Source: Scyliorhinus canicula (lineage: Eukaryota). From it: a stretch of 64,000 bases of DNA. This document shows positions 21,726-62,854 of this stretch, in pieces (position 1 is the stretch's first letter; each line of letters starts with the position of its first letter). Made by a program: the position numbers and the translations under genes. The stretch spans positions 178,731,262 to 178,795,261 of the forward strand of contig NC_052148.1 of assembly GCF_902713615.1 (NCBI RefSeq). The letters are read 5' to 3'. The notes under the pieces are model-generated. The model saw only the letters and a list, made by a program, of their open reading frames with translations. It did no database searches and was not told the origin of the DNA.

Positions 21726-21864
21726 ATTATATTTTTCTGTTAGCTCAGTTTTGTTAAAGTTGGGCTGTTTCTAAATTGAAGCAGAACCGATGATGTTTTA
21801 TTGACAGTTTTATGATACATTTTGAGGACTTCTTTTTGCTGGTACTAATAAGTTCAAAAACATG

Positions 21865-38030: not shown

Positions 38031-38973
38031 CAATTCCTGGAATCTTAACTGTGCTGGAACTTTGTCATTGCCTTTTAGACTATTTAATTAGATCATCAAA
38101 TTCCCAAATTACATCCTTTGTGACTGACATGGGAAACTTTCCCTCTCAATCCTTCTTAATGTTTCTGCAGACAGCAAGAGGGGCCATCCACAGATAATCT
38201 GTCAGCTTTAACAGGAATGTTTGGTATCATTTTTGTGGCATTTTAATGCAGTAGCATGGAAGGGATATGCTGTGATTGGAATGACTAAGAGGATTGTTGG
38301 TTAGAATATGTTCCTTATTCATTCACATTGTTAGTTAGCCCAACATTTATTTCCTACCTCTGATTGCCCTTTAGAAGGTGGTGGTGAGCTGCCCTCATGA
38401 ACTGCTGTGGTCTGTGTGATTCAGGAGCACCTCCAATGCCATTAGGAAAGGAGTTTCAGGATTTTGACCCTGAGATAGTGAAGCAACAACAACATAGTAC
38501 CAAGTTATGATGGTCTATGGCTTGGAGGTAACCTTGCAGGTGGTGGAGCTCCCATGCATTTGCTGTCCCTGTCCTCAAACAGGTAGAGGTCACTCATAGA
38601 CTTGGAAGGTGCTGTCGAAGGAGACTGGTTGAGTTACTGTAGTGCATCTTGCAGATGGTACACACTGCTGCCATTGTGCATCAGTGGTGGAGGGAGTGAA
38701 TGTTTCATTCAGGTAGTGGGCAGGGTGTCAATGAAGCGGACTGCTTTGTTGTGGATGGTATCAAGCTGCTTGAATATTGCTGGAGCTGCACTTATCCAGG
38801 TAAGTGGAGACTATTTGATCACAACCCTGATTTGCGCCTCCTACATCGTGGACAGGCCTTGGGAAGTCAGGGTGTGTGCTGCTCTCTGCAGAATTCCCAG
38901 TCTCTGACCTGCTCTTTTCGCCTCAGTATTTATATGGCTCGTCCAGTTCAGTTTACGATGAATGGTGTTGTGC

Positions 38974-39947
38974 AGCAGATTATTATACAAAAATAATCTC
39001 AGGCGATTCAGGTACACAATGATCCTTTTTTTTTGTCAACACATTGGGTGAGCACTTCTCAGTATTTCTGAAGCAGGACCCTACCCAACTGAAAATCCAT
39101 GAAATACTTATATATTGAGATTCATGTAGGCAGTACATTACTTAAATTCTAATGTTGCCTTTTTTTAGGTTTGCGTCAAACAATTTTCAGATGTTCACAA
39201 GACAGGGGGCGGGATTCCCTCACCCTGGGATTGGCAACTGGAGCAGCGTGGATCGCTCCAGTGCCGTGCTGGCCCCCTCTAGAGGTCAGAATCGCTGCTC
39301 CTGAAGCCATGTTCTCCACGGCTTTTACAACGGTGTCAACACTTAGCCTCAGGATCAGAGAATCCCGCCCAGGGTGCCTGTTACCCGAAGAATTATCTGC
39401 CTTCCCTATCTCTTTGAAGCTCCTCCTAATCTCTTGTTGTTGCCAGGTTCGGCCTTGCACTGCTAACTTTGTTTGCTAACTCAGGTCTTTGAAGTAGTAC
39501 AGAGGCTACCAGGCATTCAAGTTACTGATATGGACCCTAAAGACATCTGGGGTTCTGATACTAGCTGGTTTAACCACGTAAGCATTCAGCAAGTGGCTCC
39601 TAAGTATCTTTGCCACACCAGCATGTTAGCTGGGTGGTATTTTTTTACCCTAAATGTGGAAATTTACTTAATCTTTTCTGATGCAATTATGTAGTTTCAA
39701 ATCCCTCTAAAATTCCCTTTAGTAAATTACATGGATTCCCTAAATCCTTCTTTGATGTAAATATTTAATCCCTTTAAAGGTCCCTTAATAAACCAAATCA
39801 TTATCGATCCTAATAAATTGCTGTAATAAGCAATATTCATTATTTCCCTCTAACATTCTCTGAAGTAGTGCTCTCCCAATGTGTTGGCAAAATAAATGAT
39901 TCCTCTGTATCTGAGTTTCCTGAGTGTATTTTGTATAATAAACTGCT
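38974..39947. mobile_element. Non-autonomous DNA transposon with about 100-bp imperfect TIRs
   Basis: 38974-39075 (agcagattattatacaaaa...caacacattgggtgagcact) is the inverted counterpart of 39855-39947; a small MITE is nested at 39205-39370. Confidence 0.65.
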
Positions 39948-39954
39948 TTAGAAA

Positions 39955-42900
39955 AATGGTAACAACAGGGAAGACAGTGCAATGTTCCTCCTGCAGAGTG
40001 TTTGAGGTGAGGGACGCCGTCAGTGTCCCTGCTGATTTCACCTGTGGGAAGTGCACCTATCTCCAGCTCCTCAGAAACCGTGTTAGGGAACTGGAGCTGG
40101 AGCTGGATGAACTTTGGATCATTCAGGAGGCAGAGGTGGTCATAGATAGAAGCTTCCAGGGATGTAGTTACTCTGAAGAATAAAGATAGATGGGTGACGG
40201 TGAGAGGGGCTGGAAGGAAGCAGTCAGTATAGGGATCCCCTGTGGTCGTTCCCCTTAGTAACAAGTATACCGCTTTGGATACTGTGGGGGGGGGATGACT
40301 TACCAGGGGTAAGCCATGGGGTACAGGTCTCTGGCACAGAGTCTGTCCCTGTTGCTCAGAAGGGAAGGGGGGAGAGGAGTAGAGCATTAGTCATTGGAGA
40401 CTCCATAGTTAGGGGGATAATTAGGAGATTCTGTGGGAACATGAGAGACTCGCGGGTGGTGTGTTGCCTCCCAGGTGCCAGCGTCCGCGATGTCTCGGAT
40501 CATGTTTTCGGGATCCTTAAGGGGGAAGGGGAGCAGCCCCAAGTCGTGGTCCACATAGGCACCGACGACATAGGTAGGAAAAGGGATAGGGATGTAAGGC
40601 AGGAATTCAGGGAGCTAGGGTGGAAACCTAGATCTAGAACAAACAGAGTTATTATCTCTGTGTTGTTACCCGTGACACGTGCTAGCGAGATGAGGAATAG
40701 GGAGAGAGAGCAGTTGAACACGTGGCTGCAGGGATGGTGCAGGAGGGAGGGTTTCAGATTCCTGGACAATTGGGGCTCATTCTGGGGTAGGTGGGACCTC
40801 TACAAACGGGGTGGTCTACACCTGGACCAGAGGGGTACCAATATCCTGGGGGGGGGGGGGGGGGGGACATTTGCTAATGCTCTTCGGGAGGGTTTAAACT
40901 AGTTCAGCAGGGGTTTGGGAACCTGAATTGCAGCTCCAGTCTCCAGCAGGTTGAGAGTAGTGAGATCATGAGTAAGGTTTCTAAGTTGCAGGAGTGGACC
41001 AGCAGGTAGAAAGGTGGTTTAAAGTGTGTCTATTTCAATGCTAGGAGCATCTGGAATAAGGTGGGTGAACTTGCGGCATGGGTTGGTACCTAGGACTTCG
41101 ATGTTGTGGCCATTTCGGAGACATGGATAGAGCAGGGACAGGAATGGTTGTTGCAGGTTCCGGGTTTAGATATTTCAGTAAGCTCTGGGAAGGTGGTAAA
41201 AGAGGGGGAGGGGTGGCTTTGTTAGTCAAGGACAGTATTACGGTGTCAGAAAGGACGTTTGATGAGGACTCTGTCTACTGAGGTAGTATGGGCTGAGGTT
41301 AGAAACAGGAAAGGAGAGTTCACCCTGTTAGGAGTTTTCTATAGCCTCTGAAAAGTTCCAGAGATGTAGAGGAAGGGATTGCAAAGATGATTCTGGATAG
41401 GAGCGAAAGTAACGGGGTAGTTGTTATGGGGGACTTTAACTTTCCAAATATTGACTGGAAATGCTATAGTTCGAGTACTTTCGATGGGTCCGTTTTTGTC
41501 CAATGTGTGCAGGAGGGTTTCCTGATGCAGTATGTAGATAGGCCAACAAGAGGCGAGGCCATATTGGATTGGTACTGAGTAATGAACCAGGACAGGTGTT
41601 ACATTTGGAGGTAGGTGAGCACTTTGGTGATAGTGACCACAATTCGATTCCGTTTACTTTAGCGATGGAAAAGGATAGGTATATACCGCAGTGCAAGAGT
41701 TATTGCTGGGGGAAAGGCAATTATGATGCGATGAGGCAAGACTTAGGATGCATCGGATGGGGAAGCAAACTGCAGGGGATGGGCACAATTGAAATGTGGA
41801 GCTCGTACAAGGAACAGCTACTGCGTGTCCTTGATAAGTATGTACCTGTCAGGCAGGGAGGAAGTGGTCGAGTGAGGGAACCGTGGTTTACTAAAGTAGT
41901 TGAACCACTTGTTAAGAGGAAGAAGGAGGCTTATGTAAAGATGAGACGTGAAGGTTCAGTTAGGACGCTCGAGAGTTATAAGTTAGCAAGGAAGGAACTA
42001 AAGTGAGAGCTAAGAAGAGCCAGGAGGGGACATGGGAATTCTTTGGCAGGTAAGATCAAGAATAACCCTAAAGCTTTCTATAGATATGTCAGGAATAAAA
42101 GAATGACTGGGGTAAGTGTAGGGCCAGTCAAGGACAGTAGTGGGAAGTTGTACATGGAGTCTGAGGAGATAGGAGAGGTGCTAAATGAATATTTTTCATC
42201 AGTATTCACACAGGAAAAAGACAATGTTGTTGAGGAGAATACTGAGATACAGGTGGCTAGATTAGAGGGGCTTGAGGTTCATAAGGAGGAGCTGTTAGCA
42301 ATTCTGGAAAGTGTGAAAATAGATAAGTTCCCTGGGCCGGATGGGATTTACTTTAGGATTCTCTGGGAAGCTAAGGAGGAGATTGCTGAGCCTTTTGCTT
42401 TGATCTTTATGTCATCATTGTCTACAGGAATAGTGCCAGAAGACTGGAGGATAGCAAATGTTGTCCCCTTGTTCATGAAGGGGAGTAGAGACAACCCCGG
42501 TAACTAGAGACCAGTGAGCCTTACTTCTGTTGTGGGCAAAGTCTTGGAAAGGTTTATAAGAGATAGAATATATAATCATCTAGAAAGGAATAATTTGATT
42601 AAGGATAGTCAACACGGTTTTGTGAAGGGGAGGTGGTACCTCACAAACCTTATTGAGTTCTTTGAGAAGGTGACCAAACAGGTGGATGAGGGTAAAGCAG
42701 TTGATGTGGTGTATATGGATTTCAGTAAAGTGTTTGATAAGGTTCCCCACGGTAGGCTATTGCAGAAAATACGGAGGCATGGGATTCAGGATGATTTAGC
42801 AGTTTGGATCAGAAATTGGCTAGCTGGAAGAAGACAAAGGGTGGTGGTTGATGGGAAATGTTCAGCCTGGAGTCCAGTTACTAGTGGGGTACCACAAGGA

Positions 42901-43870
42901 TCTGTTTTGGGGCCACTGCTGTTTGTCATTTTTATAAATGACCCAGGGGAGGGCGTAGAAGGATGGGTGAGTAAATTTGCAGATGACACTAAAGTCGGTC
43001 GATTGTGGACAGTGCGGAAGGATGTTACAAGTTACAGAGGGACATAGATAAGCTGCAGAGCTGGGCTGAGAGGTGGCAAATGGAGTTTAATGCAGAAAAG
43101 TGTGAGGTGATTCATTTTGGAAAGAATAACAGGAAGACAGAGTACTGGGCTAATGGTAAGATTCTTGGCAGTGTGGATGAGCTGAGAGATCTCGGTGTCC
43201 ATGTACATAGATCCCTGAAAGTTGCCACCCGGGTTGAGAGGGTTGTTGAGAAGGCGTACGGTGTGTTAGCTTTTATTGGTCGGGGATTGAGTTTCGGAGC
43301 CATGAGGTCATGTTGCAGCTGTACAAAACTCTGGTGCGGCCGCATTTGGGGTATTGCGTGCAATTCTGGTCGCCGCATTACAGGAAGGATGTGGAAGCAT
43401 TGGAAAGGATGCAGAAGAGATTTACCAGGATGTTGCCTGGTATGGAGGGAAGATCTTATGAGGGAAGGCTGAGGGACATGAGGCTGTTTTCGTTAGAGAG
43501 AAGAAGGTTAAGAGGTGACTTAATTGAGGCATGCAAGATGATCAGAGGATTAGATAGGGTGGACAGTGAGAGCCTTTTTCCTCGGATGGAGATGTCTAGC
43601 ACGAGGGGACAGCTTTAAATTGAGGGGAGATAGATATTGGGCAGATGTCAGAGGTAGTTTCTTTACTCAGAGAGTAGTAAGGGTGTGGAATGCCCTGCCT
43701 GCAACAGTAGTGGACTCGCCAACATTAAGGGCATTTAAATGGTCATTGGATAAACATATGGATGTTAAGGGAATAGCGTAGATGGGCTTTAGAGTGGTTT
43801 CACAGGTTGGCACAACATTGAGGGCCGAAGGACCTGTACTGCGCTGTAATGTTCTATGTTCTATGTTCTA
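39955..43870 (+). mobile_element. Near full-length CR1-clade (HER1-like) LINE, frameshifted
   Basis: ORF1 zinc finger (CSSC..FTCGKC) plus SGNH-esterase motifs (GDS, VVHIGTDD, GLHL). ORF2 APE (MGDFNFP, SDHN) and RT ([34 protein letters not shown]). 3' tail (gttctat)n. Confidence 0.95.
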
Positions 43871-43939
43871 CACCCAGGGAAATTGATATTGGGGATTCCG
43901 CACTGCCATTGACATTGAATGTCAAGGGGAGATGGTCAG

Positions 43940-45470
43940 TGTCATGTTATTATACTGATATAATACCTTGGGCTTATGTACTGTACAAGAAACAAGGTAC
44001 CAATTGCTCATAAGGAAAGGAAACACATTGTGGGTTCATTTATTAAGACTCAGCACATGAGAACAGCTACACATTGGTATAAAGTGTGAAGACATCAAAG
44101 CTGTATACAGTGCTCTGCCTCAAAACAAATGTGAAACTGAGACTAAATCACATGACACACTTCTCTTCATGCTGATATTTCTTAAAGGCATATTACAACA
44201 TGCTTCTTTCTTTTTCAAAGGTGCTTTCCCCCTTCCAAAAAGTATAGCGGTTTACAATATATGTTCACCCTGGCTACTGGTACATAAGTGCACAGAACTG
44301 ATGAATCTTTGAGGATCTAAAGCTCAACCTGGTAATGCACTCAGATCTTGCAATAGTAAGCTTGTCTGTAGTTTTGTTAATTGCTCACGGTGATCTGGAG
44401 GATTGCAATTCTTGGATGTTGCTACTGGTTACATTTGAGGACCTTATCCCAGACATAAGAGTACTGTACAATGGTTGAGGAGCTGAAACGGATCTGATTT
44501 GTCTTCGGTTTGTCTGCGCGATGACTTCATAGGACATTGATTGTGAACAAATTCTTGTCACCTCGGCTGGTTGCCATGTACCTTCTGTAGGATGCTGGAT
44601 ACTAGCTTGTAAACTTGGCAATTCTATACCCAATTTTTATCATGATGTTGGTCACCTTCTCCTGTAGTTTTAAAAGTTGCCATCCAGTTTCTGAGATAGT
44701 AAAATGAGCAATGGAGGTAAATGGGGATGCACTGGTCGGCCAAAAATAAGCTATGACAGTGATGGACTAGTTGCATCACTGTCAGATGTAACATTGCGAT
44801 TTCTCTTGGTCTGTCTACATTGAGAATGAGAGATTTCACCCTACTTGCTCACTCAGTTAGACCATTAGATATAGGGGCATGATGGGGAGTAGAGGTGTGA
44901 TCGATATTCCAATTCTCATACACATTCTGAATTGGCTTACCAATAAATTGTCGACCGTTATCCATAATGATCTCTCTCGGTACAGCAAATAAACTGAAAA
45001 TAGTACTTTGAGTATGCACAACATTTATGAATGATGTTTTGTGCAACTGTTGAATAATGGGGTACTTGGTGAAGTTGTTGATGATGTTGAAGTCAGTGCC
45101 ATGGGCATGAAAGAGGTCAAATGTGACTTTGAACCCTGGATAAGTAAGGACGCCTGTATAGAATCAGTGGTGCTTTGTGTTGACTTGGTATATGTTCTTG
45201 ACATGCCTCGCACCTCTTGACAATGACTTTAATGTAATTGTTCAAACCCAGCAAATAGGCTGTCTCTCTTGTGAGTCCCCTTGTCTGATCTATGCCCATG
45301 TGTGAGTGATCAAGTTATTCAAGTATATCAGGTCACCAAGATTCTGGTACGAAGACCGGCCTGCCTTTAAAAATGACTAGGCTAACGTCCCGATAAGGCC
45401 AAAATGGTCTCACTTGATATTGGAGGTGCTGAATTGAATTAGATTATCTTTCAATGATGCTTTTCCACCG
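43940..45470 (-). mobile_element. Gypsy-like LTR retrotransposon remnant: integrase, PPT and 3' LTR (43940-44200)
   Basis: HMGIDQT..CEACQ integrase Zn motif; VPREIIMDNGRQF..SNGLTE rve core; purine tract next to a TG...CA LTR. Confidence 0.85.
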
Positions 45471-45955
45471 TTTCTGTCGTGTAGAATCATTCACTCCAAT
45501 TTTGCCAGGGCTCCTTGATGCCACAGTCACTCAAATGCTGCCTGGAAGTCAAGGACAGTCACTCTCATCCCACCTCTTGAGTTCAGCTGTTTTGTCAATA
45601 TTCAGACTAAGGCAACAGTGAGGTCAGAAGCTGAGTGGCCCCGAGAATCAGTGAACAATTTATTTGGTAAGACGTGCCGCTTGTTAGCAATAACTTTACT
45701 AATGATTGAGAGTAGACCGATTGAACGGTAATTGGCTAGGTTGGATTTATCCTGCTGTTGGTGGAGAAGATATAGATGAGCAATTGTTCGCACTGTGAAG
45801 CTGATGCCAGTGTTCTAGTTATGCTGGAACAGCTTGGCTAGGGGTATTGTTTCTTCCAAGTGGTGTTCAACATGGAGGGGTACTGATTCATCAGGTGAAG
45901 GGGTGTGGTGGGTAGTAATCAGCAGGAGTTTCCATGCCCATGTTTGACCTAATTG

Positions 45956-46352
45956 GGCGACACGGTAGTACAGTGGGTGGCATGGTAGCACAATAGGTGG
46001 CACGGTAGCACAATGGGTGGCATGGTAGCACAGTGGATAGCACTGTCGCTTCACAGCTCCAGGGTCCCACGATTGATTCCGAGCTTGTGTCACTGTCAGT
46101 GCGGAGTCTGCACGTTCTCCCAGTGTCTGCATGGGTTTCCTTCGGATGCTCCAGTTTCCTCCCACAGTCCAAAGACGTGCAGGTTAGATGGATTGGCCAT
46201 GCTAAATTGCCCTTAGTGTTCAAAGGGGTTTGGTGGGTTACGGTTATGGGGTGAAGGTGTGGGTTTAAGTGGGGTGCTCTTTCCAAGTGCCAGTGCAGAC
46301 TCAATGGGCCAAATGGCCTCCTTCTGCACTGTAAATTTTATGTCTATGTCTA
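45956..46352 (+). repeat. HE1/V-SINE-type SINE with a 4x20-bp tandem head
   Basis: Units GGYGRCAYGGTAGYACARTR at 45956, 45976, 45996 and 46016, then a normal SINE body. Confidence 0.85.
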
Positions 46353-46944
46353 ATGCCACAAGATTTCAAGGGATCTGGAGACAATGTTGAGGACTCCTAG
46401 GATAACTCCTTCCAAACTATATACCCCTGTGCTGGCACCTCTGGTGGGTTTGTCATGCAGGTGGGACAGGACATATCCAGGGTTGGTGATGGTGCTGTTT
46501 GGGACATTGTGAGGGATGATTTGGTGAGCAAGACTAGTCTATCATACAGCTCTCCCAATTTTGGCACATTCCCCAGATGTTGGTTAGGAGGACTTTGCAG
46601 GGTTGGCTGTTATCATTTCCAGTGACTTGGTCAATTCTGGGTGGCCTGTCTGGTTTTTAGACTTTTCAAAACTTTAATACAACTAGGACATTTCAGAGGG
46701 CATTTAAGAGTCAACAACATCACTGTGGGTCTCGTGTCATTTGGAGGTCAGCAGAATTCCTTCCCAAAAGGGCATTCGTGAGCCAGATAGGTTTTTATGA
46801 CAATCGTTTGGTCAACATTACTGCAACTAGTTCCTGATTTCATTAATTGATCCCAATTTCCAGCAGCTGCTCTTGTGAGATTTGAACCCACGACCACAGG
46901 ACATTAACCTGAATTGTTAATCTCTAGGCCACTGTCTCCCCCAT

Positions 46945-47760
46945 TATCAAGGCCGGATTCACAGTGGGAATTCTGTTAAGCCCCATGGATACCTAACAAG
47001 GAACATCAAGCCGTCAGAATATTTTAGGAATTAACTGTTGGAAAGAAGTATTTGCTTTCGTATCAGACTAACCAAGATGTTGTGATCTCTTCTGGCTGTG
47101 TGTTTAAAAGTCCCCTCGAGACCTTCCTGTCTACTACTACATTGGAGCAAAGTCAAACATGATCCAAAGAGCTACTTGGAATATAAAATAATCGGATTTC
47201 TTGGAATTCACACAGATTCTCCAACGCTGGCTGTGGTTTGAATAAAATCTGACTCTGGAACTTTCTTCACCACTGTACAAACCCAGGGGAGGAGTTACCA
47301 CAGCTGTAACCTCAGCCCTTTACAAATCATTAACTGAAACTTGAATCACCTCCTGGACTCTTATCTAATCACTGACCTGCTTGTGAACAGCTACTGTGGT
47401 GAAATTCTGTTCAAGGAAACAGAATGATTTCCTCTAAAGTTTTCATACATAGCCATGAAAATCTCTTGTGACCATGGCTGGGTGGGGGAGGGAGTAGAAG
47501 ACCTGGATCTGAAAACATTGGTGAGGGGCTTCCCCTGGAGCTGGTTTCAATGTGATTACATAATGTAGGGATTGGTTTATCAGGTGATTCCCAGTGTCGG
47601 ATAGCAGTGTAAAGGGTAGTTTAATGCTGCAGAATGGGTAATGTTCCTGCATTTACAAGCACAGGGGATGAAGTATTGGTGTCTCTTAACACTGTGGGAG
47701 GCGAATATTTGGAAATGGCAGGCTGGAGAAAAGAACAATTCTGGAATATTTGAAGGAGGC
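46945..47760 (+). promoter_or_regulatory. Conserved distal non-coding block A, unit 3 (its 5' part lies at 38170-38320)
   Basis: More diverged paralog. GAS TTCTTGGAA 47198-47206, NF-kB GGGGCTTCCC 47525-47534. Confidence 0.55.
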
Positions 47761-47769
47761 CTAGAACAG

Positions 47770-48375
47770 GGGGCGGGATTCTCTAATCCTGAGGCTGTGT
47801 GTTGACGCCATTATAAACGCCGTCTCGACGGCGTCAACATGGCCTCAGGAGCAGCAATTCTAAACCTTTCAGGGAGCCAGCACGGCTCTGGAGCGAGCCA
47901 CGCCGCTCCAGCTGTCGATTCCCGGCGTCAGATGGCCGCCGTGGGCCTGCGCATACGTAGTGGGACCGGCTAGATTGCAGCGCATGCGCAGTGGCTCCCT
48001 CCTCTGCGCTGGCCCTGACGCAACATGGCGTAGGGCTACAGGGACCGGTGCGGAACAAAGAGGCCCCCAGCCCGAGAGGCTGGCCCGCTAATCGGTAGGC
48101 CCCGATTGCGGGCCAGGCCACAGTAGAGGCCACCCCCGGAGTCGGACCCCCCTCCCCCCACCAGGTCGCCCCCTCCCCCCCCCCCCCAGATGCATCCACG
48201 CCGAAAGTCCCGCTGGCTAAGAGCAGGTGTGGACGGCGCCGGCGGGAGCCGGCTTTTTTTGCGGGGCCGCTCGGCCCATCCCGGACCGAGAATTGCCGAA
48301 TGCCGCACACCGTGGCAGGATTCGCGCCGGTCTCGTCGATTCCCCGGCCCAGCCCGGGGTGAGAGAATCCCGGCC
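47770..48375. mobile_element. GC-rich Harbinger-type MITE
   Basis: GGGCGGGATTCTCT ... GAGAGAATCCCGGCC TIRs. Confidence 0.8.
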
Positions 48376-50399
48376 TGGATTCCAGGTTCTGGAATGTTTA
48401 TTTTCATTCTTTCACAGGAGGTGGGCATTACTGGCTAGGGCAGCATTTATTGCCGACTCCTAATATCCTTTGAGAAGTTGCTGGTGGGCTGCCTTTGTGA
48501 ACCGCTACAGTCCACATATTGTAGGAACCTCCACAGTGCTGTTAGGAAGGCAGTTTTAGAATTTGAACCCAGCGACAGTGAAGGAATGGTGATATATTTC
48601 TAAGAAAGGATGGTGTGTAACTTGGAGGGGAATTTATAGTTGGTGGTGTTCCCATGCATCTTCTGCCTTTATGCTTCCAGATGGTAGTGTGCGCTGGCTT
48701 TGGAAGATGCTGTCAAATGAGCCTTGGTGAGTTGCTGGAATGCATCTTGTAGATGGTACTGTTATACCATGCTGAGCAAGTGTATGGTCAATTCCAGCTC
48801 CAAATGCCCCGGAGTCACAACACAATTGAATGAACCAATCATTCTTATAGAAACTCCCCAAATCTTTGGCCCATGGCTGCCTAATAATTACAGTCACCAG
48901 GTTTGTAGGTTGAAACACAATTACTGCTTATTTAAATCACGATTTATGGTGGAATATGCAGCAGATGCAGTTGGTTAAGTATTGATAAGTACCTAACCCC
49001 TACTGTAACATGCCCCCCCCCCCCCCCCCCCCCATCACCTGCGCATACACCCAAGACTGACAAACACAAAGCGGGGGAGGGAAAATATGTCAATGAAAGT
49101 GAAAACCGTCTTTGCTTCAAATGATGGGTCCTTACAGACTTTCTCCACATTAGGCTTGGGAATCACCGTCCTTGTTTTGCAGCTGTACTCACAATTTTCC
49201 TGGTGAGACAAAGTCCCTGTTTTACCAGACTTAGCTCTCAGTTTGAAGCTGACTTCTGGCCCTAATTTCTGGGATCCAACAATTCCTGCAGGTTCTTTGG
49301 TTGTTCCATTGTCTGGGGAGAACTGGAGGACACTGAAATCCTGGGGCTTGGAAGTACGAGCATAGTCGTTCTGAAATCAACACCGGGATTTCAGATTGAA
49401 ACCCTGACCTCGGGTGGGAATGGAGACAGCAGGTCTACTTGGTTGAGAGGGAATAACTTACATTGGGCCACCTGAGATAGCCAGTGGGAGTTGGGGCAGA
49501 AGGAAGGTGGGAAGGAAGGACAAGAGCCCACGTCATGAGTCTGTGGAATTTCCAAACCTGTATGTTTTGTGGGATGAAGGTTTGCAGAATCAAAACTTTA
49601 ATGTCACTCCGAAATCCCCTCAAATACTTCACATATAAGGATATATGTGTACAATGGAAGGTCTTCTCACGTTTGGGTTTCCAGATAGTTTGAGATTATG
49701 CACAGCTCCTCTTGTAGAAGTCCAAAGTTCTTTTCTTCAAACAAAGCTTTCACCACAACAAAAACTCCACTTCCATTTTAATGGGCGGTAGCTTTCAGGG
49801 GTATTGCATCACCAGATTTCCCACAGCGGGCCCAAACCATGTTGTTGATTAAAAACCTTCTATCATTTCAAATCAACAACATTTGAATCACAAAATTCAG
49901 TGAAACCAAACCTTCCCCGGTGAGCATAAATTAGGTTTGAGTTTGAGAGACTTCTGGTGTTAAGAAGGCAGTAACAGCCCAGTCCCCATCCTGCCCCCCC
50001 CCCCCCCCCCCCACCTCATCATGACCCAGTGTCAAGTATTTGAAGGTCTTTGTGTGTACGACTTTCATCCATCTAATGAAGGTGGCCCAGCCAGTGCAGA
50101 CATCATTGGCTCTGCATCTGTCATTGGCATCAGTCCTGCCTGCCATCCACCCCCCCCCCCCCCCCCCCCCCCCGAAGACTCGGTGGTTGGCACCGCACCC
50201 TCGCAACACAATACTGCACCTGTGCCCTAGGACACCCGGGCACCCACCTGCACACCCCACCCACGGTCCCTGCAGACTGCGGGGGTGACCGAGGACAGGG
50301 CGGTCACCAAAATAGAGCTTGGCCTGTGCTGCAGAGGTGACGGTCCATCAGCCCCCAACCAGTTGACCTGTCACATATCAGTTATTCATGCCAGACATA

Positions 50400-50580
50400 A
50401 TGAATGAAATGAAATGAAAATCGCTTATTGTCACGAGTAGGCTTCAATGAAGTTACTGTGAAAAGCCCCTAGTCGCCACATTCCGGCGCCTGTTCGGGGA
50501 GGCTGTTACGGGAATCGAACCATGCTGCTGGCCTGCCTTGGTCTGCTTTCAAAGCCAGCGATTTAGCGCAGTGTGCTAAA
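50400..50580 (-). repeat. Short tRNA-derived SINE with (TTTCA)n tail
   Basis: Reverse complement of the 22343 family. Confidence 0.88.
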
Positions 50581-51169
50581 AATGATCCTTCTCTCTCACT
50601 GACCGCATGTCCATTCTCAAGCAGGATCTCCATCTGATGGTGTTGGCCCATCCGGGGTGAACCCCCCCCCCAACCCCCTCCACCCAAGGGAACACTTTGG
50701 GGGGAGAGCTCCGTGGACGCCTCCATTGGGACATCACAGCTATTAACCGCACCATCCACCAGCGCAGACACACATCTCAGTGGGCGACATTAGTGGACAG
50801 GGTTCTGGAGCACAATCTGGTGAGAATCCACACAGTTGCTGATACACATCAGGTGGAGAATTGACAGATGACTTGTAGCTGGTCAATAATGTGCACAAGA
50901 CACCTGAAACCAGCATGGAATTTAATAGGCTGAACATCCCTGAAGAGACCTGACCCGTCGAGAATGATTCACTGAAAGGAAAACATTACATGTTCAAATG
51001 GCAGGAGATGAATTCAGAGGAAACACATGAGCAAGGTGTAGGCTTCGCTGTAAGGAACTTACTACTCACGATGATAGAAGTCCCCATAAATGATTCAGAA
51101 TGTGTTCTCTCCATTCTCCTCTCAAGGTTTCCAGGCGTAAGTGGCAGATGCCATGAGTGCTGTGGGCCC

Positions 51170-53735
51170 CAGCACCAGGAGTGGATAGCAGTGCAGGAAA
51201 AACTGTACAAACTCCTCAGGGCGGCCAAGGTGAGTAGGCACCGCCCCTGGCACTAATCGCCATCCCACACCCCACGACCAACCCCCCCCCCCCTCCCCCC
51301 CGCCCGCCACTGCCCACCCCATCCGAAGGGCGACCAAACCCCTACCCTGCACCACATGCTAGCACCCATACCGGATGTCATGGCTGGTTGCCCTGGCCAC
51401 GAAGGGCACCAGCTGCCCACCATCTGTGCTGCATGTGTCCGACTGTCTAGCATTGTGCGCTTCTTGTCTTTCGCCCCCACAAGAGAAGGGGGCTCACAAC
51501 TGCTGGGGGAGAGTCAAAAGACTGGAGGGGGACCGGCAGACCTGCGGCCCCTCACCACAGCAGATCAGTGGACACTGGACCTGGTTAGTGGGCTGGGAGA
51601 GAGGGCATTCGTTGTGGCGGAGATCAGCATCGGGAAAGCAAGTGAAACATCGCTGAGTTGCATTTCCCATGGCACGTGTGTCACCACCCCCCCCACCCCC
51701 CCCACCCCCCAGATGGACACCAACCCCCATGTCGCCTCCATCATCACCACCCCCACAACACTCCCAAACCACCCCCTCCACCACCAATCAATCCAAGGAC
51801 TTGCTGCCATCCAGATGTGTTTCGGGCTTCACTATCCTATTGATAGTGGAGATGCAGTCATAGAGCCAGGGACTGCATGGGGCGGGGGTGGGGGGGAGGG
51901 GGTGTCAGCAACCATCCCGCACCTGCAGGTGCAGTTGGAGGAGTACGACCACCCGCAAGAGCAGGAAGAGGTACCGACAATGCGTGCCACCCAGTTGAAC
52001 ACTGCACATGGGTGGCGTCCACAGTGGAGGTCTTGGGGGTGAAGGTACTGGCCATGGCTCAAGATGCCCAAGGCCTAGGGCATTCTGTTGCAGGCAGTGA
52101 TGAAGGCCCAGGGCAGGGCTTCCCTGCCATGTACTAGAACCACCTAGACATTACACAGTGCTCCAGAGCGTGGCCCAGTCACAGTGGGTCATGGCTGAGG
52201 GCGCCGGCGGCACTGCCCGGGCACTGGCTGACCTCAGCCAGATGCAGAGGTAGGATTGCACCATCTCTGGCTGATGTGGCACAGACCCAGAGGGAGGTGG
52301 TTTACTCCCTGTCCTCCATGGCCGCGAGATTCGAGACTCTGGCCAAGACTGGAGTGGGCCCCCAGCACCTGTAGCAGCATGTGGCAGGGGTGCCTCATGG
52401 ACTAGCTCCGCTCACACCCCCATCCTATGGAGTAGCCCAGGAGCCATCAGGCACACCAAGGGAGGAGGAGGAAGCGATGGGGCCTGTGCTGGTGACTCAT
52501 GCAGGGGAGTTGCTGGATCACCACAGGGCTTCAGACTCCCCCCTTCCTGTTGCTGGCACATCTGATGGGCAGCGGGCAGAACAGGATGGCACCACCCCAC
52601 CTAGGACACCCGAGCAGCAGCTGGGCCTATTCAGGCCGCCGAAAGGGACCCAGGTCACAGTGCGGGAATCGCAGCAGGCCGCCTCCACTCCTAATGTACC
52701 GCTTGGGGAACCACCTAGGTGCAGCATTAGGGCCCGTAAGGCCAGAAAGGTAGACATCAGTTGGGTTGGCATATTTGCAGCACATAGGATAGCGTTACGG
52801 GCTTGTTCATCATTGTACAATAAACACCTGTTCACAACATTTCAACCTCCTCGGTACTCTGTCAGACTGGGTGTGAGGGATGGCCTGGGCGTGGCTGGCT
52901 GCAGAGGAGCGCTGGGGGTGGAGGGGAGATGGGGACAGTGGGGGGTGGGCTTGGGCCAGGGACCCAGTTTTGACAGTGTCCCTCCCAACCTACTCGCGTT
53001 TCCCCAGCGACCACATCTCAGCCACCCCAGGGTTTGGGAGGGACCATGTGATGGAATGGCCAGCTCACATGCAGGGATCACACAGGTGGATGGTGGAAAG
53101 TGCTACAATGGGCAAGTGTCAGACGTTGTCAAACAGTGTGGAGCACCAGAGCTCATCGCAGTACAGGTCGTCCTCACCCTCCATCCCATGGACCAGACCC
53201 ACTGTTACTGTCAGCCCAGGGCTTGCACCCCATAGTTACGCAGGTAGGAAGCACGGAGGGGGCTGCAAGGCGGGGGGGGGGGGGGTGGTTGGCGGGGTGT
53301 ATATCACAGGGAGGGTTTTCATGTGAAGGGGTCGTCAGCTGGGGAGGGGGGGGGGGTGTCTGGGGGTGGGACAGGGTGTCCGTGCCACTGGCCAGGCCCC
53401 TTAGTCGGTGAACCCGGAGACGATTATAGGGTCCAATGCATGCTGGGCTAGGCACATACGTTGTGCTGCCCCCTGTCCCTGGGCCTCAAGTGCTGCCCAT
53501 CCTCGCCCTCCCCAGCATACTCCTGTTCGGACAAGGCCTTGCTTTCATCCTCCTCCTCCAGCATGTCGTCCCTTTGATGCGTTATGTTGTGGAGGACGCA
53601 GCAGGTCACCATGATGTGGGAGACTCATGGCATTCTGGTGTGCTCCGGGCGCCTGCCACGATTTCGCTTCACAACCAATTCTCCGCACAACCACATCTTC
53701 CCGATTCCGCTGTCGCCTGATGGAGAATCCCACCC
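51170..53735. mobile_element. PIF/Harbinger remnant (Myb-like gene on +, transposase C-terminus on -)
   Basis: + strand (Q)CRKNC/LLRAAK|gtgagt and TGGGPADLRPLT resemble the 21865-23040 element. The - strand at 53550-53625 reads VSHIMVTCCVLHNITHQRDDMLEED, similar to Harbinger transposase C-termini. Ends in GGAGAATCCCACCC. Confidence 0.75.
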
Positions 53736-53964
53736 TTGGTTTTTACATTGCTGCGAGCCAACAATAGTTAGCACTGCCGCCTCTCACTGCCAGAGACCCA
53801 GGTTCAATTCTGGCCTTGGATGACTGTTTGTATGGAGGTCGCCCTTTCTTCCCATGTCATAGAGCCATAATGGTCCACAGCACACAAAAGGCTCTTCAGC
53901 CCATCGTTTCTGCGCCGGTCAGAAACAACCACCTAAGTATTCTAATCCCATTTTCCAGCACTTT

Positions 53965-54345
53965 AGAATTTAGAATTTAGAACAGTACAGCACAGAACAG
54001 GCCCTTCGGCCCTCGATGTTGTGCCGAGCAATGATCACCCTACTCAAACTCACGTATCCATCATATACTCGTAACCCAACAACTCCCCCTTAACCTTACT
54101 TTTTAGGACACTACGGGCAATTTAGCAATCCCCCCATTAACCTTACACTACGGGCAATTTAGCATGGCCAATCCACCTAACCTGCACATCTTTGGACTGT
54201 GGGAGGAAACCGGAGCACCCGGAGGAAACCCACGCACACACGGGGAGGACGTGCAGACTCCACACAGACAGTGACCCAGCCGGGAATCGAGCCTGGGACC
54301 CTGGAGCTGTGAAGCATTGATGCTAACCACCATGCTACCGTGAGG
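53965..54345 (-). repeat. HE1/V-SINE-type SINE with internal duplication
   Basis: Near-identical to 58060-58393 and 61366-61716. Confidence 0.88.
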
Positions 54346-54524
54346 CCTATAGCCTTGTATGCCTTGGCATTGCAAGTGCATAGCTAAATACGTCTTAAGT
54401 GTTATGAGAGTCTTTGCCTCCACCACCCTTACAGGCAGTGAGTTCCAGTCTCCCATCACCCTCTGGGTGAAAATGTTTCTCCTCACATCCCCTCTCAACC
54501 TCCCGCCCCTGACCTTAAATCTAT

Positions 54525-54868
54525 GGGGAAGCGGTGGTGTAGTGATATTGTTACTAGACTAGTAAACCAGAAACCCAGGGTAATGCTCTGGGGACCTGGG
54601 TTTGAATCCTGTCACGGCAGATGGTGAAATTTGAATTCAATAAAAATCTGGAAATGAAAGTCTATAGATGACCATGAGACCATAGCCGATTGTCGTAAAA
54701 ACCCATCTCGTTCACTAATGTCCTTTCGGGAAGGAAATCTGCCATCTTACCTGGTCTGGCCTACACGTGACTCCAGACCGTCAACGATGTGGTTGACTCT
54801 TAACTGCCCCCTCAAGGGCAATTATGGATGGGCAATAAATACTGGCACAGCTTGCGACGCCCAGAAAA
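54525..54868 (+). repeat. DeuSINE-type (SacSINE1-like) SINE
   Basis: tRNA-like head; AAAAACCCATCT.GTTCACTAATGTCCTT..GGGAAGGAAATCTGCC central domain; decayed minus-strand copy at about 46690-46940. Confidence 0.75.
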
Positions 54869-55759
54869 AGGCCCTCGGGTCATTGATCCTTCCACCAAGG
54901 GGAAAACTTTCCTGCCTACTGTATCTATGCCCCTCATAATTTTATATATCTTGATCATGTCACCCCTCAGTCTTCTCTGCTCCGAGGAAAAGAACCCCAG
55001 GCTATCCAATCTCACTTCATAACTAAAACTCACTGGGCAACATCCTGGCAAATCTCCTCTGCACCCTTTCCAATGCTATCACATCCCTCCTATAATGTGG
55101 ATTCCAGAACTACGCACAATACTCTAGCTGTGGCCTAACCACTGTGTCTGCGTGGGTTTCCTCTGGGTACTCTGGTTTCCTCCCACAGTCCAATGATGTG
55201 CACGTTAGGTGGATTGGCCATGCTAAATTGCCCCTCAGTGACCAAAGATGTGCAGATTAGTTGCTGTGCGGAATAGGGCAGGGGTGTGGGCCTAGGTGGG
55301 GTGGTCTTTCGGAGGATCGGTGCGGACCCGACGGGTGAACGGCCTCCTTCTGCATTGTAGGGATTCTATGATTCTATGAACAGAATAAGCTGAAAAAGAG
55401 AAACAAACTATGTACAAAAGGAGCTAACTCCCCTCACCCACACACCAGATGCATCACATCATAATTCTAAACTCCAGGGTATTTATACCGAATCTAAATA
55501 TGATAAGATCTATTTGTGTGGTTGCTCATACGTTCAAGTCTGTGTGACAAGTGTGCTCAGTCCTGACCTTAATCCTGACATTGTTTAGTTGAAATACTGA
55601 AGGTGGGATTTTCTGTCTGTTCCTTCTGACGGGATCTTCTGGACCCGCCATAGGTTCTCCAGTTGCGGAGAGTGAAATCCAGCCAATGGCAGGCTGCCTC
55701 CGCCCTATCTAATATAGCCATTTTAATATGCTGGTGCAAATTCTTATTGAAAAGATGAA

Positions 55760-56745
55760 AATAATTGCAACTAACATCCGCAAATAGTTTTGCCTAAGTG
55801 CATTGCTTTACAATTGGAATGTGAACTTTTGTAAAATGAGCAGAGATATAGTTTTAACTCTGCAACCTGTATGGCTGGCATGGTAGCACAGTGGTTAACA
55901 CTGTTGCCTCACGGGTCCAGGGTTCAACTCCGGCCTCGGGTGACTGTGCGGAGTCTGCACGTTACACAGAACATAGAACAGTACAGCACAGAACAGGCCC
56001 TTCGGCCCTCGATGTTGTGCCGAGCAATGTTCTCCCCGTGTCTTCGTGTGTTTTCCTCCCGGTGCTCCGGTTTCCTCCCACAGTCCAAAGATGTGCAGGT
56101 TAGATGAATTGGCCATGCTAAATTGCCCCTTAATGTCAAAACAGTTATGTGTGTTACGGGATAGGTGGAGGCGCGGGCTCTTTCCAAGGGCCAGTGCAGA
56201 CGTGATGCGCCGAATGGCTTCCTTCCGCACTGTAAATTCTGTGAAATCACAGAACGGGCCGCTTCTTGTAATTCTCAAGTTTCAATTCAGGAGTGTTTCC
56301 TTTTTATAATAATCCTAAGAAATGGGGCCAAGTTTAGAAAATGACATTGTCCTTGGGGTCAGACGCCAAATGTGGAACTGAATTTTTCTGCAACCAATCT
56401 GAAACTTCATTTTGAGGAAGAACGTCTGATGTATAATTAATCAGACCTTGTGATTGGTGATTCCCTGCAAAGTCTTAGCCACGTTTTAACTCTGAGTCAA
56501 TTAGTCAGTTTGAACAACAAACAGCCAAGGAAATAGCTGACAGCAAAATAAAACATCTCCGCTCGTGCAAGAATATTGGCGACATTTCTATTCCAGAACT
56601 GAAATTGTTGCGTTGTCAAACTTAAATTCATGACAAGTGGCAACTTGAACCATCTTTTGAACTCCATTTACACCATTGTATCTCTTTCCAAACCGACACA
56701 TTAAGGTCCAAAGAGTCACATCATAAAGCGCAGCAAGTAACAGGC
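55760..56745 (+). promoter_or_regulatory. Conserved upstream block D, unit 3 (SINE inserted at about 55875-56245)
   Basis: Third, more diverged copy of block D; no chemokine exon follows within the window. Confidence 0.55.
55875..56245 (+). repeat. HE1/V-SINE-type SINE with a nested antisense SINE tail (about 55963-56027)
   Basis: The body is interrupted by a reverse-oriented 3' tail fragment. Confidence 0.82.
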
Positions 56746-56834
56746 AGAAATTATGGGCGGGATTCTCCGTCGGCTGACCCCAGAATCAGGAAACACAGTT
56801 GTGTGGAGAATTGGTTTTAATGCTAAATTCAAAA

Positions 56835-58900
56835 GACCATAAGACATATGAGCAGAATTAGACCACTCGGCCCATCTGCTTTGCCATTTTCTCATCTCCA
56901 TTCTCCATTCTCCTGCCTTCTCCCCATAACCCCTGATCCCCTTATCAATCAAGAACCTATCTGTCTCTGTCTCAGTGATTTGGCCTCCACAGCCTTCTGT
57001 AGCAAAGAGTTCCACAGATTCACCACCCTCTGGCTGAAGAAATTCCTTCTTATCTCTGTTTTAAAGGAACGTCCCCTTATTCTGAGGTTGTGCCCTCTGG
57101 TTCTAGTTTTTCCGACAAGTGGAAACATCCTGTCCACATCCAATAAGTATCCAATAAGTTGCAATAAGATCCCCCTTCATCCTTCTAAACTCCAATGAGT
57201 ACAGACCCAGAGTCCTCAACCGCTCTTCATATGACAAGCTCTTTGTTTCAGGTATCATTCTTGTGAACCTCCCCTGGAACCTTTCCAAGGCCAGCACATC
57301 ACTGGGCCTAAAACCGCTCACAATACTCCAAATGAATTCTGACCAGAGCCTTATACAGCCTCAGAGGTACATGCCTGCTCTTGTATTCTAGCCCTCTCAA
57401 CGTGAATGATAACAATGCATCTGCCTTCCTAACTGCCGAGTGAACCTGTGCGTTAACCTGAAGACAATCTTGAAAAAGGACTCCGAAGCCCCTTTATGCT
57501 TCTGATGTCCTAAGCATTTCCCCATTTGGAAAATAATCTATGCCTCCATTCCTCCTTCCAAAGTGCATAACCTCACACTTTTCCACATTGCATTCCATCT
57601 GCCACTTCTTTGCCCACTGTCTTAGCCTGTCCAAGTCCTTCTGCAGCTCCCCTGCTTCCTCAATACTTGTCCCTCTACAGATCTTTGTACCATCTGCAAA
57701 CTTAGCAACAGTGCCTTCAGTACCTTCTTCCAGATCATTAATGTATATTGTGAAAAGTTGTGGTCCCAGCACAGACTCCTAAAGCACACCACTAGTCACC
57801 AGCACCATTCTGAAAAGGACCCCTTTATCCCCGCTCTCTGCCTTCTGCCAGCCAGCCAATCCTCTATCCATGCTAGTACCGTACCCTTAACACCATTGGA
57901 ACTTATTTTACAGTCTCCTCTGCGGCACCTTGTCAACGGCCTTCTGGAAATCTAAATAAATCAAGCCCACTGGTTCTCCTTTGTCTAACTTCCTTATTGC
58001 CTCTTCAAAGAATTTGCAGACATGATGCCCCTTGATGAAGCTATGCTGACTCAAGGTAGTGGGGCCTCATGGTAGCATGGTGGTTAGCATCAATGCTTCA
58101 CAGCTCCACGGTCCCAGGTTCGATTCCCGGCTGGGTCACTGTCTGTGTGGAGTCTGCACGTCCTCCCTGTGTGTGCGTGGGTTTCCTCCGGGTGCTCCGG
58201 TTTCCTCCCACAGTCCAAAGATGTGCGGGTTAGGTGGATTGGCCATGCTAAATTGCCCGTAGTGTAAGGTTAATGGGGGGATTGTTGGGTTATGGGTATA
58301 CGGGTTACGTGGGTTTAAGTAGGGTGATCATTGCTCGGCACAACATCGAGGGCCGAAGGGCCTGTTCTGTGCTGTACTGTTCTATGTTCTATGTAATACT
58401 ATTTTATCATGCATTTCCAATTATTCTGCAATCTCATCTTTAATAATGGACTCTAAAATCCTACCAATGACCAAAGTCAGGCTAACCAGCCTATAATTTC
58501 CCATCTTTTGCCCCTCTCCCTTCTTAAACAGGGACATTACATCAGCCACTTTCCAGTCCTCTAGGACCCTTCCTGCCTCCAGTGATTTCTGAAAGATCAC
58601 CATCAATGCCTCCACAATCTCGTCAGCTAGCTATTTTAGATCGCCGAGGGTGTAGTCCATCTGGTCTAGGTGATTTATCCACCTTAGAGCTTTCAATTTC
58701 CACAGAACCTTCTTGTGATGGCCACTACACTCAGCTCTGCCCCCTGATTCTCCTGGAGCTCTGGTATCCCACTGGTGTCTTCCATGGATGATGCAAAGTA
58801 ACTATTCAGTTCCTCTGCCATTCCTTTGTTTCCTATTGCAACTGCTCCAACATCATTTTCCAGTGGTCCAGCATCTATTCTTGCCTTTGTGTCTTCTTTT
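56835..58900 (-). mobile_element. CR1-clade LINE remnant (RT and 3' end), with a SINE nested at 58060-58393
   Basis: LGPQLFTIYINDL..KFADGTK, GNYRLVSLT and RRNFFSQRVVNLWNSL fragments. Confidence 0.88.
58060..58393 (+). repeat. Young HE1/V-SINE-type SINE
   Basis: Intact head and V-domain; (GTTCTAT)n tail shared with the CR1 at 43810-43870. Confidence 0.9.
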
Positions 58901-61365: not shown

Positions 61366-61716
61366 TAGAACATAGAACATAGAACAGTACAGCACAGAAC
61401 AGGCCCTTCGGCCCTCAATGTTGCGCCGAGCCATGATCACCCTACTCAAACCCACGTTACCACCCTATACCCGTAACCCAACAACCCCCCCTTAACCTTA
61501 CTTTTATTAGGACACTACGGGCAATTTAGCATGGCCAATCCACCTAACCCGCACATCTTTGGACTGTGGGAGGAAACCGGAGCACCCGGAGGAAACCCAC
61601 GCACACAGGGGGAGAACGTGCAGACTCCACACAGACAGTGACCCAGCCGGGAATCGAACCTGGGACCCTGGAGCTGTGAAGCATTTATGCTAACCACCAT
61701 GCTACCCTGCTGCCCC
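61366..61716 (-). repeat. Young HE1/V-SINE-type SINE
   Basis: Near-identical reverse complement of 58060-58393. Confidence 0.9.
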
Positions 61717-62854
61717 CCATTTAAAAAGGGAGATAGAGAGAAAACAGTGTATTATAGATCAGCGAGCCTGACGTCGGTAGTGGGAAAATTCTGACATCCA
61801 TTATCGAAGATTTGATAGCAGAGCATTTTGAAAATAATAGCAGGATCAGGCAGGTCAGCATGGATTTATGAAAGGGAAATAATGCTTGAAAAATCTACTG
61901 GAATTCTTTGAGGATGTAACTCATACAGTTGATGAGGGGGAGCCAGTGGATGTGATCTTTTTGAACTTTCAGAAGACTTTTGACAAGGTCCCACATAAGA
62001 GAGCAGTGTGTAAAATTTAAGTATCTGGGATTGGGGTAGAATATTGAGAGGGAAAGAAAGCTGGTTGACAGACAGGAAAAAAAGTGTAATAAATGCGTCT
62101 TTCACCAAGTGACAGGCAGTGGCTAAGGGTATCGCAGAGATGAGTGCTGGGACGCTAGTCATTCTCAATGTATATTAATAATTTAGATGAAGGAACTAAA
62201 TGTAATATTCCCAAAATTGCAGATGTTATAAAACTGGGAGGGAGGGTGAGCTCTGATGAGGATGCAGAGATGCTTCCTATGATTTGGACAAGTTGAATGA
62301 GTGGGTAAATGCATGGCAGATGTACATTGAGTGAGGGGAATGTGCAACAAGACTTGGGTGTCCTTGTACACCACTTGCATCCCGGTACAGCAGGCAGTAA
62401 AGGCAGCAAATAGTATGTCGGTCTTCATAGTGAGTACAGAAGCAGGGATATCAGGGCCTTGGTGAGACCACACCTGAAATATTGTGTGCAGTTCTGGTGT
62501 CCTTATCTGAGGAAGGATGTTCTTGCTATAGAAGGAATCCAGTGAAGGTTTACCAGGCTGTTTCCTGGATGGCAGGACTGATATACGAGAGATTGAGTCA
62601 GATAGGATTATATTCACTGGAGTTCAGAAGAATGAGGAGGGGTGTCTCATAGAAACATATAAAATTCTAACAGGACTAGACAGGGTAGATGCAGAAAGGA
62701 TGATCCTGATGGTGGGAGTGTTCAGAATCAGGGGTCAGAGTCTAAGGATAAGGGGTAAACCATTTCCGACTGAGATGAGGAGAAACATCTTCATCCAGAG
62801 AGTGGTGAGACTGTGGAATTCTCTATCTAGAAAAATGTTGAGACCAAAACATTG

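What the first reader, a model, noticed from the sequence alone, without database searches (positions are those of the whole stretch)
38170..56745. A third, gene-less copy of the upstream region predicts a third chemokine beyond the window
Seen: blocks preceding both genes recur in the same order and strand: A (38170-38320 plus 46945-47760), C (about 49640-49960 vs 28960-29200, and about 55550-55600) and D (55760-56745). In unit 2, block D ends about 400 bp before the ATG. In unit 3 it is followed by more than 7 kb of nested CR1/SINE/MITE up to the window end. This copy is the most diverged of the three. Inference: a third, older paralog (or its remnant) lies downstream of 64000 on the + strand.
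Basis: partly seen in the sequence, partly recalled or inferred. Interest (0 to 1): 0.7.

Follow-up and report, generated by a model that had tools for sequence, protein, structure and literature searches.

The report
Upstream region of a third shark chemokine gene
This stretch is a real, old, transposon-swollen third copy of the DNA that sits upstream of each gene in a catshark chemokine cluster, and it most likely belongs to an already annotated 102-residue paralog just past the window, so it is ordinary.

Summary
The window matches Scyliorhinus canicula and carries two tandem CXC chemokine genes, at 14656-16950 and 30726-32440. Their upstream blocks A, C and D recur once more at 38176-56754. 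They keep the same order and strand, at 66-75% identity. Two blocks are split by a CR1-like LINE and by SINEs.

Unit 3 is equidistant from units 1 and 2 and more diverged than they are from each other. The blocks are not an interspersed repeat. They are low-copy in the window, and D and the promoter lie upstream of all five + strand genes of the whale shark cluster. No promoter or chemokine exon follows block D up to 64000; that stretch is nested LINE, SINE and other repeats.

I could not read beyond the window, so the predicted gene is inferred. S. canicula has three more paralogs on this chromosome. Whale shark DNA shows the order 96-aa genes, then a long-tailed paralog, then a third type, all on one strand. 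Accession numbers in two catsharks fit that order. Unit 3's blocks match the whale shark long-tail gene's upstream region best. The likely owner is XP_038648974.1 (about 0.7).

This is ordinary gene-cluster evolution and already annotated. The scan's notes hold no entry for this gene beyond the window.

The parts
38176..38309 (+). Unit 3, block A, first piece. It is cut off from the rest of A by an 8.7 kb insertion.
   Evidence: 73% identity to 24817-24960 of unit 2.
38310..46973 (.). Insertion that splits block A. It holds a CR1-like LINE at about 39800-43880 (+), a SINE at 46020-46342 and other repeat pieces.
   Evidence: Pfam RVT_1 (E 4.6e-23) and a GDSL esterase domain in its ORFs. The SINE has 11 or more copies in the window.
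46974..47738 (+). Unit 3, block A, main piece.
   Evidence: Matches 24995-26503 (unit 2) and 5386-5850 (unit 1). Best whale shark match is block A upstream of the long-tail gene, nhmmer score 169.
49348..49908 (+). Unit 3, block C.
   Evidence: 49704-49908 ~ 28967-29169 at 75%. 49348-49824 ~ L001:1422-1848, E 1.7e-43, and this is the only whale shark hit.
53962..55146 (-). LINE 3' fragment between C and D, with another repeat nested at 54521-54858.
   Evidence: nhmmer against the window's own LINE. The nested element has other copies at 45485-46935 (-) and in whale shark.
55723..55872 (+). Unit 3, block D, first piece.
   Evidence: Matches 29658-29789. Three-way alignment A1.
55873..56244 (.). 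SINE inserted into block D.
   Evidence: 12 or more copies in the window. Absent from block D of units 1 and 2.
56245..56754 (+). Unit 3, block D, main piece. This is the last homology to the other units.
   Evidence: 72% to 12645-13108 and 68% to 29824-30307. Best whale shark match is block D of the long-tail gene, score 168.
56830..58844 (-). CR1-like LINE fragment directly after block D, with a SINE nested at 58061-58399.
   Evidence: tblastn and nhmmer with the window's LINE. It belongs to a different subfamily (59% identity) from the LINE at the matching spot in whale shark, so the two insertions are independent.
58845..59931 (.). Repeat-derived spacer.
   Evidence: 59448-59701 ~ 21869-22120 (-). 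Weak collinear similarity to 62964-63570.
59932..62861 (+). Second CR1-like LINE fragment, with a SINE nested at 61361-61716 (-).
62862..63746 (.). Repeat-derived spacer.
   Evidence: 63026-63520 ~ 640-1149 (-). 62964-63222 ~ 58974-59244.
63747..64000 (+). Third LINE fragment, which runs off the window end.
   Evidence: nhmmer to LINE reference positions 43199-43465.
30726..32440 (+). Gene 2, a comparator. Exons at 30726-30786, 31233-31362, 31562-31641 and 32421-32440. It encodes XP_038647750.1.
   Evidence: The spliced translation equals P0024.
14656..16950 (+). Gene 1, a comparator. It encodes XP_038648972.1.
   Evidence: Read from the sequence; the translation equals P0002. The recorded gene span of 2295 bp agrees.

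Best explanation
Window 38176-56754 is the 5' flank of a third unit in a tandem array of shark CXC chemokine genes. The ancestral unit is compact, about 5 kb: block A, (C), D, promoter, a four-exon gene, then a 3' tail. In the catshark each unit has been stretched by LINE and SINE insertions.

Unit 3 split from the lineage of units 1 and 2 before those two split from each other. After its block D, at least 7.2 kb of nested retroelements lie where the promoter should be, so the promoter and gene fall beyond position 64000 on the + strand.

The gene is most likely the annotated 102-residue 'long-tail' paralog, XP_038648974.1. This type differs from the 96-residue genes in reading past their stop-codon position.

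- **Shown:** the homology, its order and strand, the relative age, and the repeat content.
- **Inferred:** that a gene follows, and which gene it is.
For: **The third unit is real and old**
- Blocks are collinear and on one strand.
- Unit 3 is equidistant from units 1 and 2 and further from both than they are from each other.

**The blocks belong to the cluster, not to a repeat family**
- They occur only 2-3 times in the window, against 11-13 for the SINEs.
- In 108 kb of whale shark sequence (L001-L004), block D and the promoter sit upstream of all five + strand genes.
- Block D's 31-mers are present in some low-coverage runs of one sample and absent in others, as expected for a single-copy locus.

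**More paralogs exist, in a conserved order**
- S. canicula has three further paralogs on the same 277 Mb chromosome: XP_038648971 (96 aa), XP_038648974 (102 aa) and XP_038648975 (CKCIR type). Gene 1 is XP_038648972.
- S. torazame numbers run 016 (CKCIR), 017 (long-tail), then 018, 019 and 021 (96 aa). This is the mirror order.
- Whale shark DNA gives P0036, P0015 and P0037 (96-aa type), then gene A (long-tail), then gene B (CKCIR), all on the + strand. Locus overlaps prove the orientation.

**Unit 3 resembles the long-tail gene's flank**
- Upstream of whale shark gene A lie A, C and D, then 3.3 kb of LINE insertions, then the promoter. So an expanded D-to-promoter spacer occurs at a gene with intact exons.
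- Unit 3 and gene A are reciprocal best matches for A, C and D. The long form of C is found only in those two.
- On the protein tree the long-tail paralog lies outside the clade of carcharhiniform and lamniform 96-aa genes, so it is the older paralog.
Against: - No S. canicula sequence beyond 64000 could be read. The gene, its distance and its strand are inferred.
- Accession order is only a proxy for position. Gene 2 itself has an out-of-series number, XP_038647750.
- XP_038648973 was not identified.
- Block trees leave unit 3 and whale shark gene A unresolved. The U3+geneA grouping has 55/43 support, and the alternatives are not rejected (p-AU 0.23).
- The LINE after block D is not a shared insertion with whale shark.
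- The whale shark cluster also holds degraded, inverted copies, so relics do occur in this family.
- 7.2 kb after D without any promoter trace also fits loss of the gene.
Confidence: 0.72

Rival explanations
1. Unit 3 is an orphan relic. Its promoter and gene were deleted, or were never part of the copied segment. The next chemokine gene downstream carries its own upstream module.
For: No promoter, exon or tail homology anywhere in 35000-64000. The whale shark cluster contains degraded, inverted partial copies.
Against: The whale shark relics keep promoter or exon fragments, and unit 3 shows none. In every other case seen, block D precedes a promoter. Two paralogs remain unplaced next to the window, and synteny puts one directly after the last 96-aa gene.
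Confidence: 0.15
2. Unit 3 belongs to the third 96-residue paralog (XP_038648971.1), not to the long-tail gene. In that case the long-tail gene lies further on or elsewhere.
For: In the five-sequence block A tree, unit 3 groups with units 1 and 2 at 92/93 support. Holding U1+U2+U3 together is not rejected. No 3' tail of an upstream unit 0 is visible in window 1-4800.
Against: Accession order puts 971 on the far side of gene 1 from 974. Whale shark and S. torazame place the long-tail gene right after the 96-aa genes. Unit 3 matches whale shark gene A's flank best, and it shares the long form of block C with that flank alone.
Confidence: 0.1
3. Blocks A, C and D are copies of an interspersed repeat, and their order is a coincidence.
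For: Block A occurs in both orientations within the whale shark cluster.
Against: The blocks are low-copy in the window. Seven pieces keep strict order and strand. In whale shark they are always tied to chemokine units, and the inverted A copies sit next to inverted tail blocks, which marks them as parts of inverted units. The blocks showed no similarity to the window's own CR1-like LINE and have no SINE-level copy number; they were not themselves put through Pfam. The run shares are patchy, as for a single-copy locus.
Confidence: 0.02

Closest known systems
Tandem CXC chemokine gene clusters of vertebrates, such as the CXCL1-8 and CXCL9/10/11 arrays on human 4q (my own knowledge)
   Same: Small four-exon CXC genes are repeated head to tail together with their flanks. 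Coding regions are kept alike within a species. Paralogs are of different ages.
   Different: In the catshark the units are heavily stretched by CR1-like LINE and SINE insertions. The third unit's distal blocks lie at least 7 kb from any promoter.
Whale shark 'interleukin-8-like' cluster, NC_063332.1:111.71-111.82 Mb (L001-L004)
   Same: The same A-(C)-D-promoter-gene-tail unit is present. The gene order is 96-aa type, then long-tail, then CKCIR type. The long-tail gene has A, C, D and a LINE-expanded spacer before its promoter.
   Different: The whale shark units are compact, with D about 1 kb from the ATG in the 96-aa genes. The cluster also includes inverted degraded copies. The LINEs in the D-to-promoter spacer are independent insertions.
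S. canicula XP_038648974.1 (P0022, 102 aa, 'interleukin-8-like')
   Same: It is on the same chromosome. Its accession is adjacent to gene 1's. It is an older lineage than the 96-aa genes.
   Different: Its position relative to the window was not seen. Its gene spans 7.2 kb, against 1.4-2.3 kb for the 96-aa genes.

Membership tests
Duplication unit of the shark CXC chemokine tandem array | Collinear, same-strand homology to the upstream regions of the other units | tested here: met
   Seven pieces in order on the + strand at 66-75% identity.
Duplication unit of the shark CXC chemokine tandem array | Preceded by the 3' tail of the previous unit | tested here: met
   The tail homology of unit 2 ends at about 34950 and block A of unit 3 starts at 38176. 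Whale shark P0037 to gene A shows the same tail-then-A arrangement.
Duplication unit of the shark CXC chemokine tandem array | Blocks restricted to the cluster and conserved in another shark | tested here: met
   Block D lies upstream of all five + strand whale shark genes. A and C lie upstream of gene A.
Duplication unit of the shark CXC chemokine tandem array | Followed by a promoter and a four-exon chemokine gene | not testable with these tools
   None within the window. DNA beyond 64000 was not available.
Interspersed repeat (transposable element) | High copy number, dispersed, in either orientation, with element-type coding or terminal features | tested here: not met
   One or two other copies in the window, against 11-13 for the SINEs. 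No similarity to the window's own CR1-like LINE by tblastn or nhmmer. Patchy 31-mer presence across runs.
Orthologue of the upstream region of the long-tail paralog | Groups with the whale shark long-tail gene's flank on a tree | tested here: inconclusive
   Reciprocal best nhmmer scores and a shared long block C. The U3+geneA clade has only 55/43 support and alternatives are not rejected.
Conserved cis-regulatory module | Islands of sequence kept well above the neutral level across copies | tested here: not met
   Only one 10-bp run is at least 85% conserved across 8 copies of D, and none across 10 copies of A. Block identity of about 70% is no higher than the 73% of the promoter-to-exon-3 stretch, introns included.

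The most novel reading that the evidence does not exclude
Blocks A, C and D could be distal regulatory modules kept upstream of this chemokine family since before catsharks and whale sharks diverged. In unit 3 they would still act on a promoter now more than 7 kb away, across nested retroelements.
Probability: 0.12. Interest if true: 0.4.

Novelty: already known. Interest (0 to 1): 0.2.

Why it matters
The finding shows that a gene just outside a sequence window can be predicted from a diverged, gene-less copy of its upstream flank. It also gives a unit-by-unit map of how a shark chemokine cluster grew by tandem duplication and was then stretched by retroelements.

The predicted gene is already in the public annotation, and the mechanism is textbook. 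The value is mainly as a worked annotation. It also gives three-way anchors (96-aa, long-tail and CKCIR types) for naming shark CXC chemokines.

Tried and rejected
**Routes that were blocked**
- Fetching DNA beyond the window failed for S. canicula, S. torazame (both assemblies) and Mustelus, because the sample files are too large.
- The scan's notes hold nothing beyond the window.
- Paper searches for catshark CXC chemokines and for the four accession numbers found nothing useful.
No read-depth or RNA evidence was obtained.
One local alignment script still used the whole window as its query. The later scripts that covered that stretch masked it or worked beside it; the rest did not touch it.

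**Ideas tested and dropped**
- Shared LINE insertion. The LINE right after block D in unit 3 and in whale shark gene A has the same orientation and a similar 5' truncation point. The two are only 59% identical and fall in different, fully supported subfamilies. The idea is rejected.
- Shared repeat between C and D (54521-54858 ~ L001:3952-4284). In the catshark it is nested inside a LINE, and in whale shark it is not. These are independent insertions.
- The LINE fragment at the window end as an orthologue of the one just before the whale shark promoter. The scores are no better than for other copies. Not used.
- A weak exon-2-like translation at 20283-20354 (E 0.05) has no DNA-level support.
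- ORFs in 51356-53720 and 56716-63206 gave no Pfam hit.

Full report
**What the window is.** The spliced product of the gene at 14656-16950 equals XP_038648972.1. That of the gene at 30726-32440 equals XP_038647750.1. Both are 96-residue 'interleukin-8-like' CXC chemokines of Scyliorhinus canicula, on a 277 Mb chromosome. No other chemokine exon exists in the window on either strand. This holds when searching with the 96-aa proteins or with the more distant 102-aa paralog.

**The observation.** A self-comparison of the window shows units 1 and 2 homologous over about 4832-20190 and 24915-34936. Seven further pieces of unit 2's upstream region, and two of unit 1's, recur at 38176-56733. They keep the same order and strand at 66-75% identity.

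- Block A is split by an 8.7 kb insertion. That insertion contains a CR1-like LINE with reverse-transcriptase and GDSL-esterase domains.
- Block D is split by a SINE.
- The blocks have one or two other copies in the window. The SINE family has 11-13.
- Three-way alignments give K2P distances of 0.35 (U1-U2) against 0.46 (U3 to either) for block A. For block D they are 0.18 against 0.36-0.37. Unit 3 is therefore the outgroup and the oldest.
- Block D of unit 2 ends 375-398 bp before the ATG.
- One sub-claim failed: no piece of block C was found at about 55550-55600.

**What follows block D.** nhmmer with the promoters, gene bodies and 3' tails of units 1 and 2 finds nothing in 35000-64000 except SINEs and other repeats. 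Mapping against the window's own LINE gives this layout:

| Window position | Strand | Content |
|---|---|---|
| 56830-58844 | - | LINE, with a SINE nested at 58061-58399 |
| 58845-59931 | . | repeat-derived spacer |
| 59932-62861 | + | LINE, with a SINE nested at 61361-61716 |
| 62862-63746 | . | repeat-derived spacer |
| 63747 to the end | + | LINE, running off the window |

The 'more than 7 kb of nested repeats' is correct. 'MITE' was not verified.

**Are the blocks a repeat family?** No. Whale shark DNA could be fetched as four overlapping loci, L001-L004. They stitch into 108 kb of NC_063332.1, and the overlaps prove that all are in the record's own orientation.

- Block D and the promoter lie upstream of all five + strand chemokine genes there.
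- Blocks A and C lie upstream of the long-tail gene.
- The 3' tail blocks follow four of the five + strand genes; none was found after gene B.
- Inverted A copies sit beside inverted tail blocks, so they are parts of inverted units.
- The ancestral unit is compact. In P0015, blocks A, D and the promoter fit within 1.9 kb.
- Block D's 31-mers are present in some low-coverage catshark runs and absent in others of the same sample. That is the pattern of a single-copy locus.

**Is there a gene beyond the window?** This could not be read directly. The indirect evidence is as follows.

- S. canicula has five paralogs on this chromosome: three 96-aa genes (XP_038648971, XP_038648972 and XP_038647750), a 102-aa gene (XP_038648974) and a CKCIR-type gene (XP_038648975).
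- The 102-aa protein belongs to a 'long-tail' lineage also present in S. torazame, Mustelus, Chiloscyllium, Stegostoma and whale shark. Its C-terminal extension corresponds to what is 3' UTR in the 96-aa genes.
- On a protein tree the long-tail lineage lies outside the clade of carcharhiniform and lamniform 96-aa genes. It is thus the older paralog.
- In whale shark the order on one strand is three 96-aa genes, then the long-tail gene, then the CKCIR gene.
- S. canicula accession numbers (971, 972, 974, 975) and S. torazame numbers (021, 019, 018, 017, 016) fit the same order and its mirror image.
- The gene after the last 96-aa gene is therefore expected to be the long-tail one.

**Does unit 3 match that gene's flank?** Upstream of the whale shark long-tail gene lie A (L001:1-450), C (1422-1848) and D (5906-6425). 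Then come 3.3 kb of LINE fragments, then the promoter at about 9740.

- Unit 3 is the best catshark match for each of these blocks, and they are the best whale shark match for unit 3. The long form of C is found only in these two.
- The trees are not decisive. U1+U2 form a clade and the whale shark 96-aa units form a clade. Unit 3 and gene A come off an unresolved node. The U3+geneA grouping has 55/43 support and the alternatives give p-AU 0.23.
- The LINE after block D is not a shared insertion.

**Mechanism and verdict.** This is ordinary tandem duplication followed by retroelement bloat.

- The coding regions of the 96-aa genes are kept alike within each species. The core is 94% identical against 72-84% in the flanks, and the proteins group by species.
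- The blocks show no islands of strong conservation, and their identity does not exceed that of the promoter-to-exon-3 stretch, introns included. Their survival is probably neutral.
- I put about 0.72 on unit 3 being the flank of XP_038648974.1 lying beyond 64000. I put 0.15 on an orphan relic, 0.10 on the third 96-aa gene, and about 0.02 on a repeat.

**Limits.** I sent those places to no search tool afterwards. One local alignment script still contained them. The later scripts that covered that stretch masked it or worked beside it; the rest did not touch it.

Noticed in passing
window 42520-43868 and L001:51170-52527: A CR1-like LINE is 92-93% identical between catshark and whale shark over 1.36 kb, and the whale shark copy has an open reading frame. 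Identity is the same in the coding and 3' non-coding parts, and the differences are spread over all codon positions. Blocks and the promoter-to-exon-3 stretch of the same loci are only 70-73% identical. This points to horizontal transfer or to an unusually stable active lineage.
   Followed up: partly
window 16948-17000 and 32438-32490; L001:16228-16314: The 3' UTR just after the stop codon of the 96-aa genes is homologous to the coding C-terminal extension of the long-tail paralogs. TGA in the catshark genes aligns with AGA in whale shark gene A, followed by ...QWDGL..PGNL in both. The two protein types differ by gain or loss of a stop codon.
   Followed up: partly
L001:10001-42670: The whale shark RefSeq model XP_048458695.1 (166 aa) fuses two neighbouring genes. 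It joins exons 1-3 of the long-tail gene to exons of the CKCIR-type gene 30 kb away. It skips the long-tail gene's own last exon at about L001:16228.
   Followed up: partly
window 13137-14189; L001:6425-9740; window 56755-64000: The junction between block D and the promoter has taken insertions independently in three units: about 1.05 kb in unit 1, 3.3 kb in whale shark gene A, and at least 7.2 kb in unit 3. It is intact in unit 2 and in the whale shark 96-aa genes.
   Followed up: partly
window 642-1433, 3521-4053, 21011-21864, 48057-48296, 63026-63520 (-): A further repeat family lies upstream of block A in units 1 and 2 but after block A in unit 3. It should not be counted as part of the duplicated unit.
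   Followed up: partly
L002:494-3303 (-) and L002:20472-20546 (-): The whale shark cluster holds inverted, degraded chemokine copies that are not annotated as genes. One has a stop codon inside exon 2.
   Followed up: no
window 15504-16251: A GC-rich insertion of about 750 bp sits in intron 3 of gene 1 and is absent from gene 2. It has poly-C and poly-G runs near its ends and GCGCATGCGC repeats. It is probably a DNA element.
   Followed up: no
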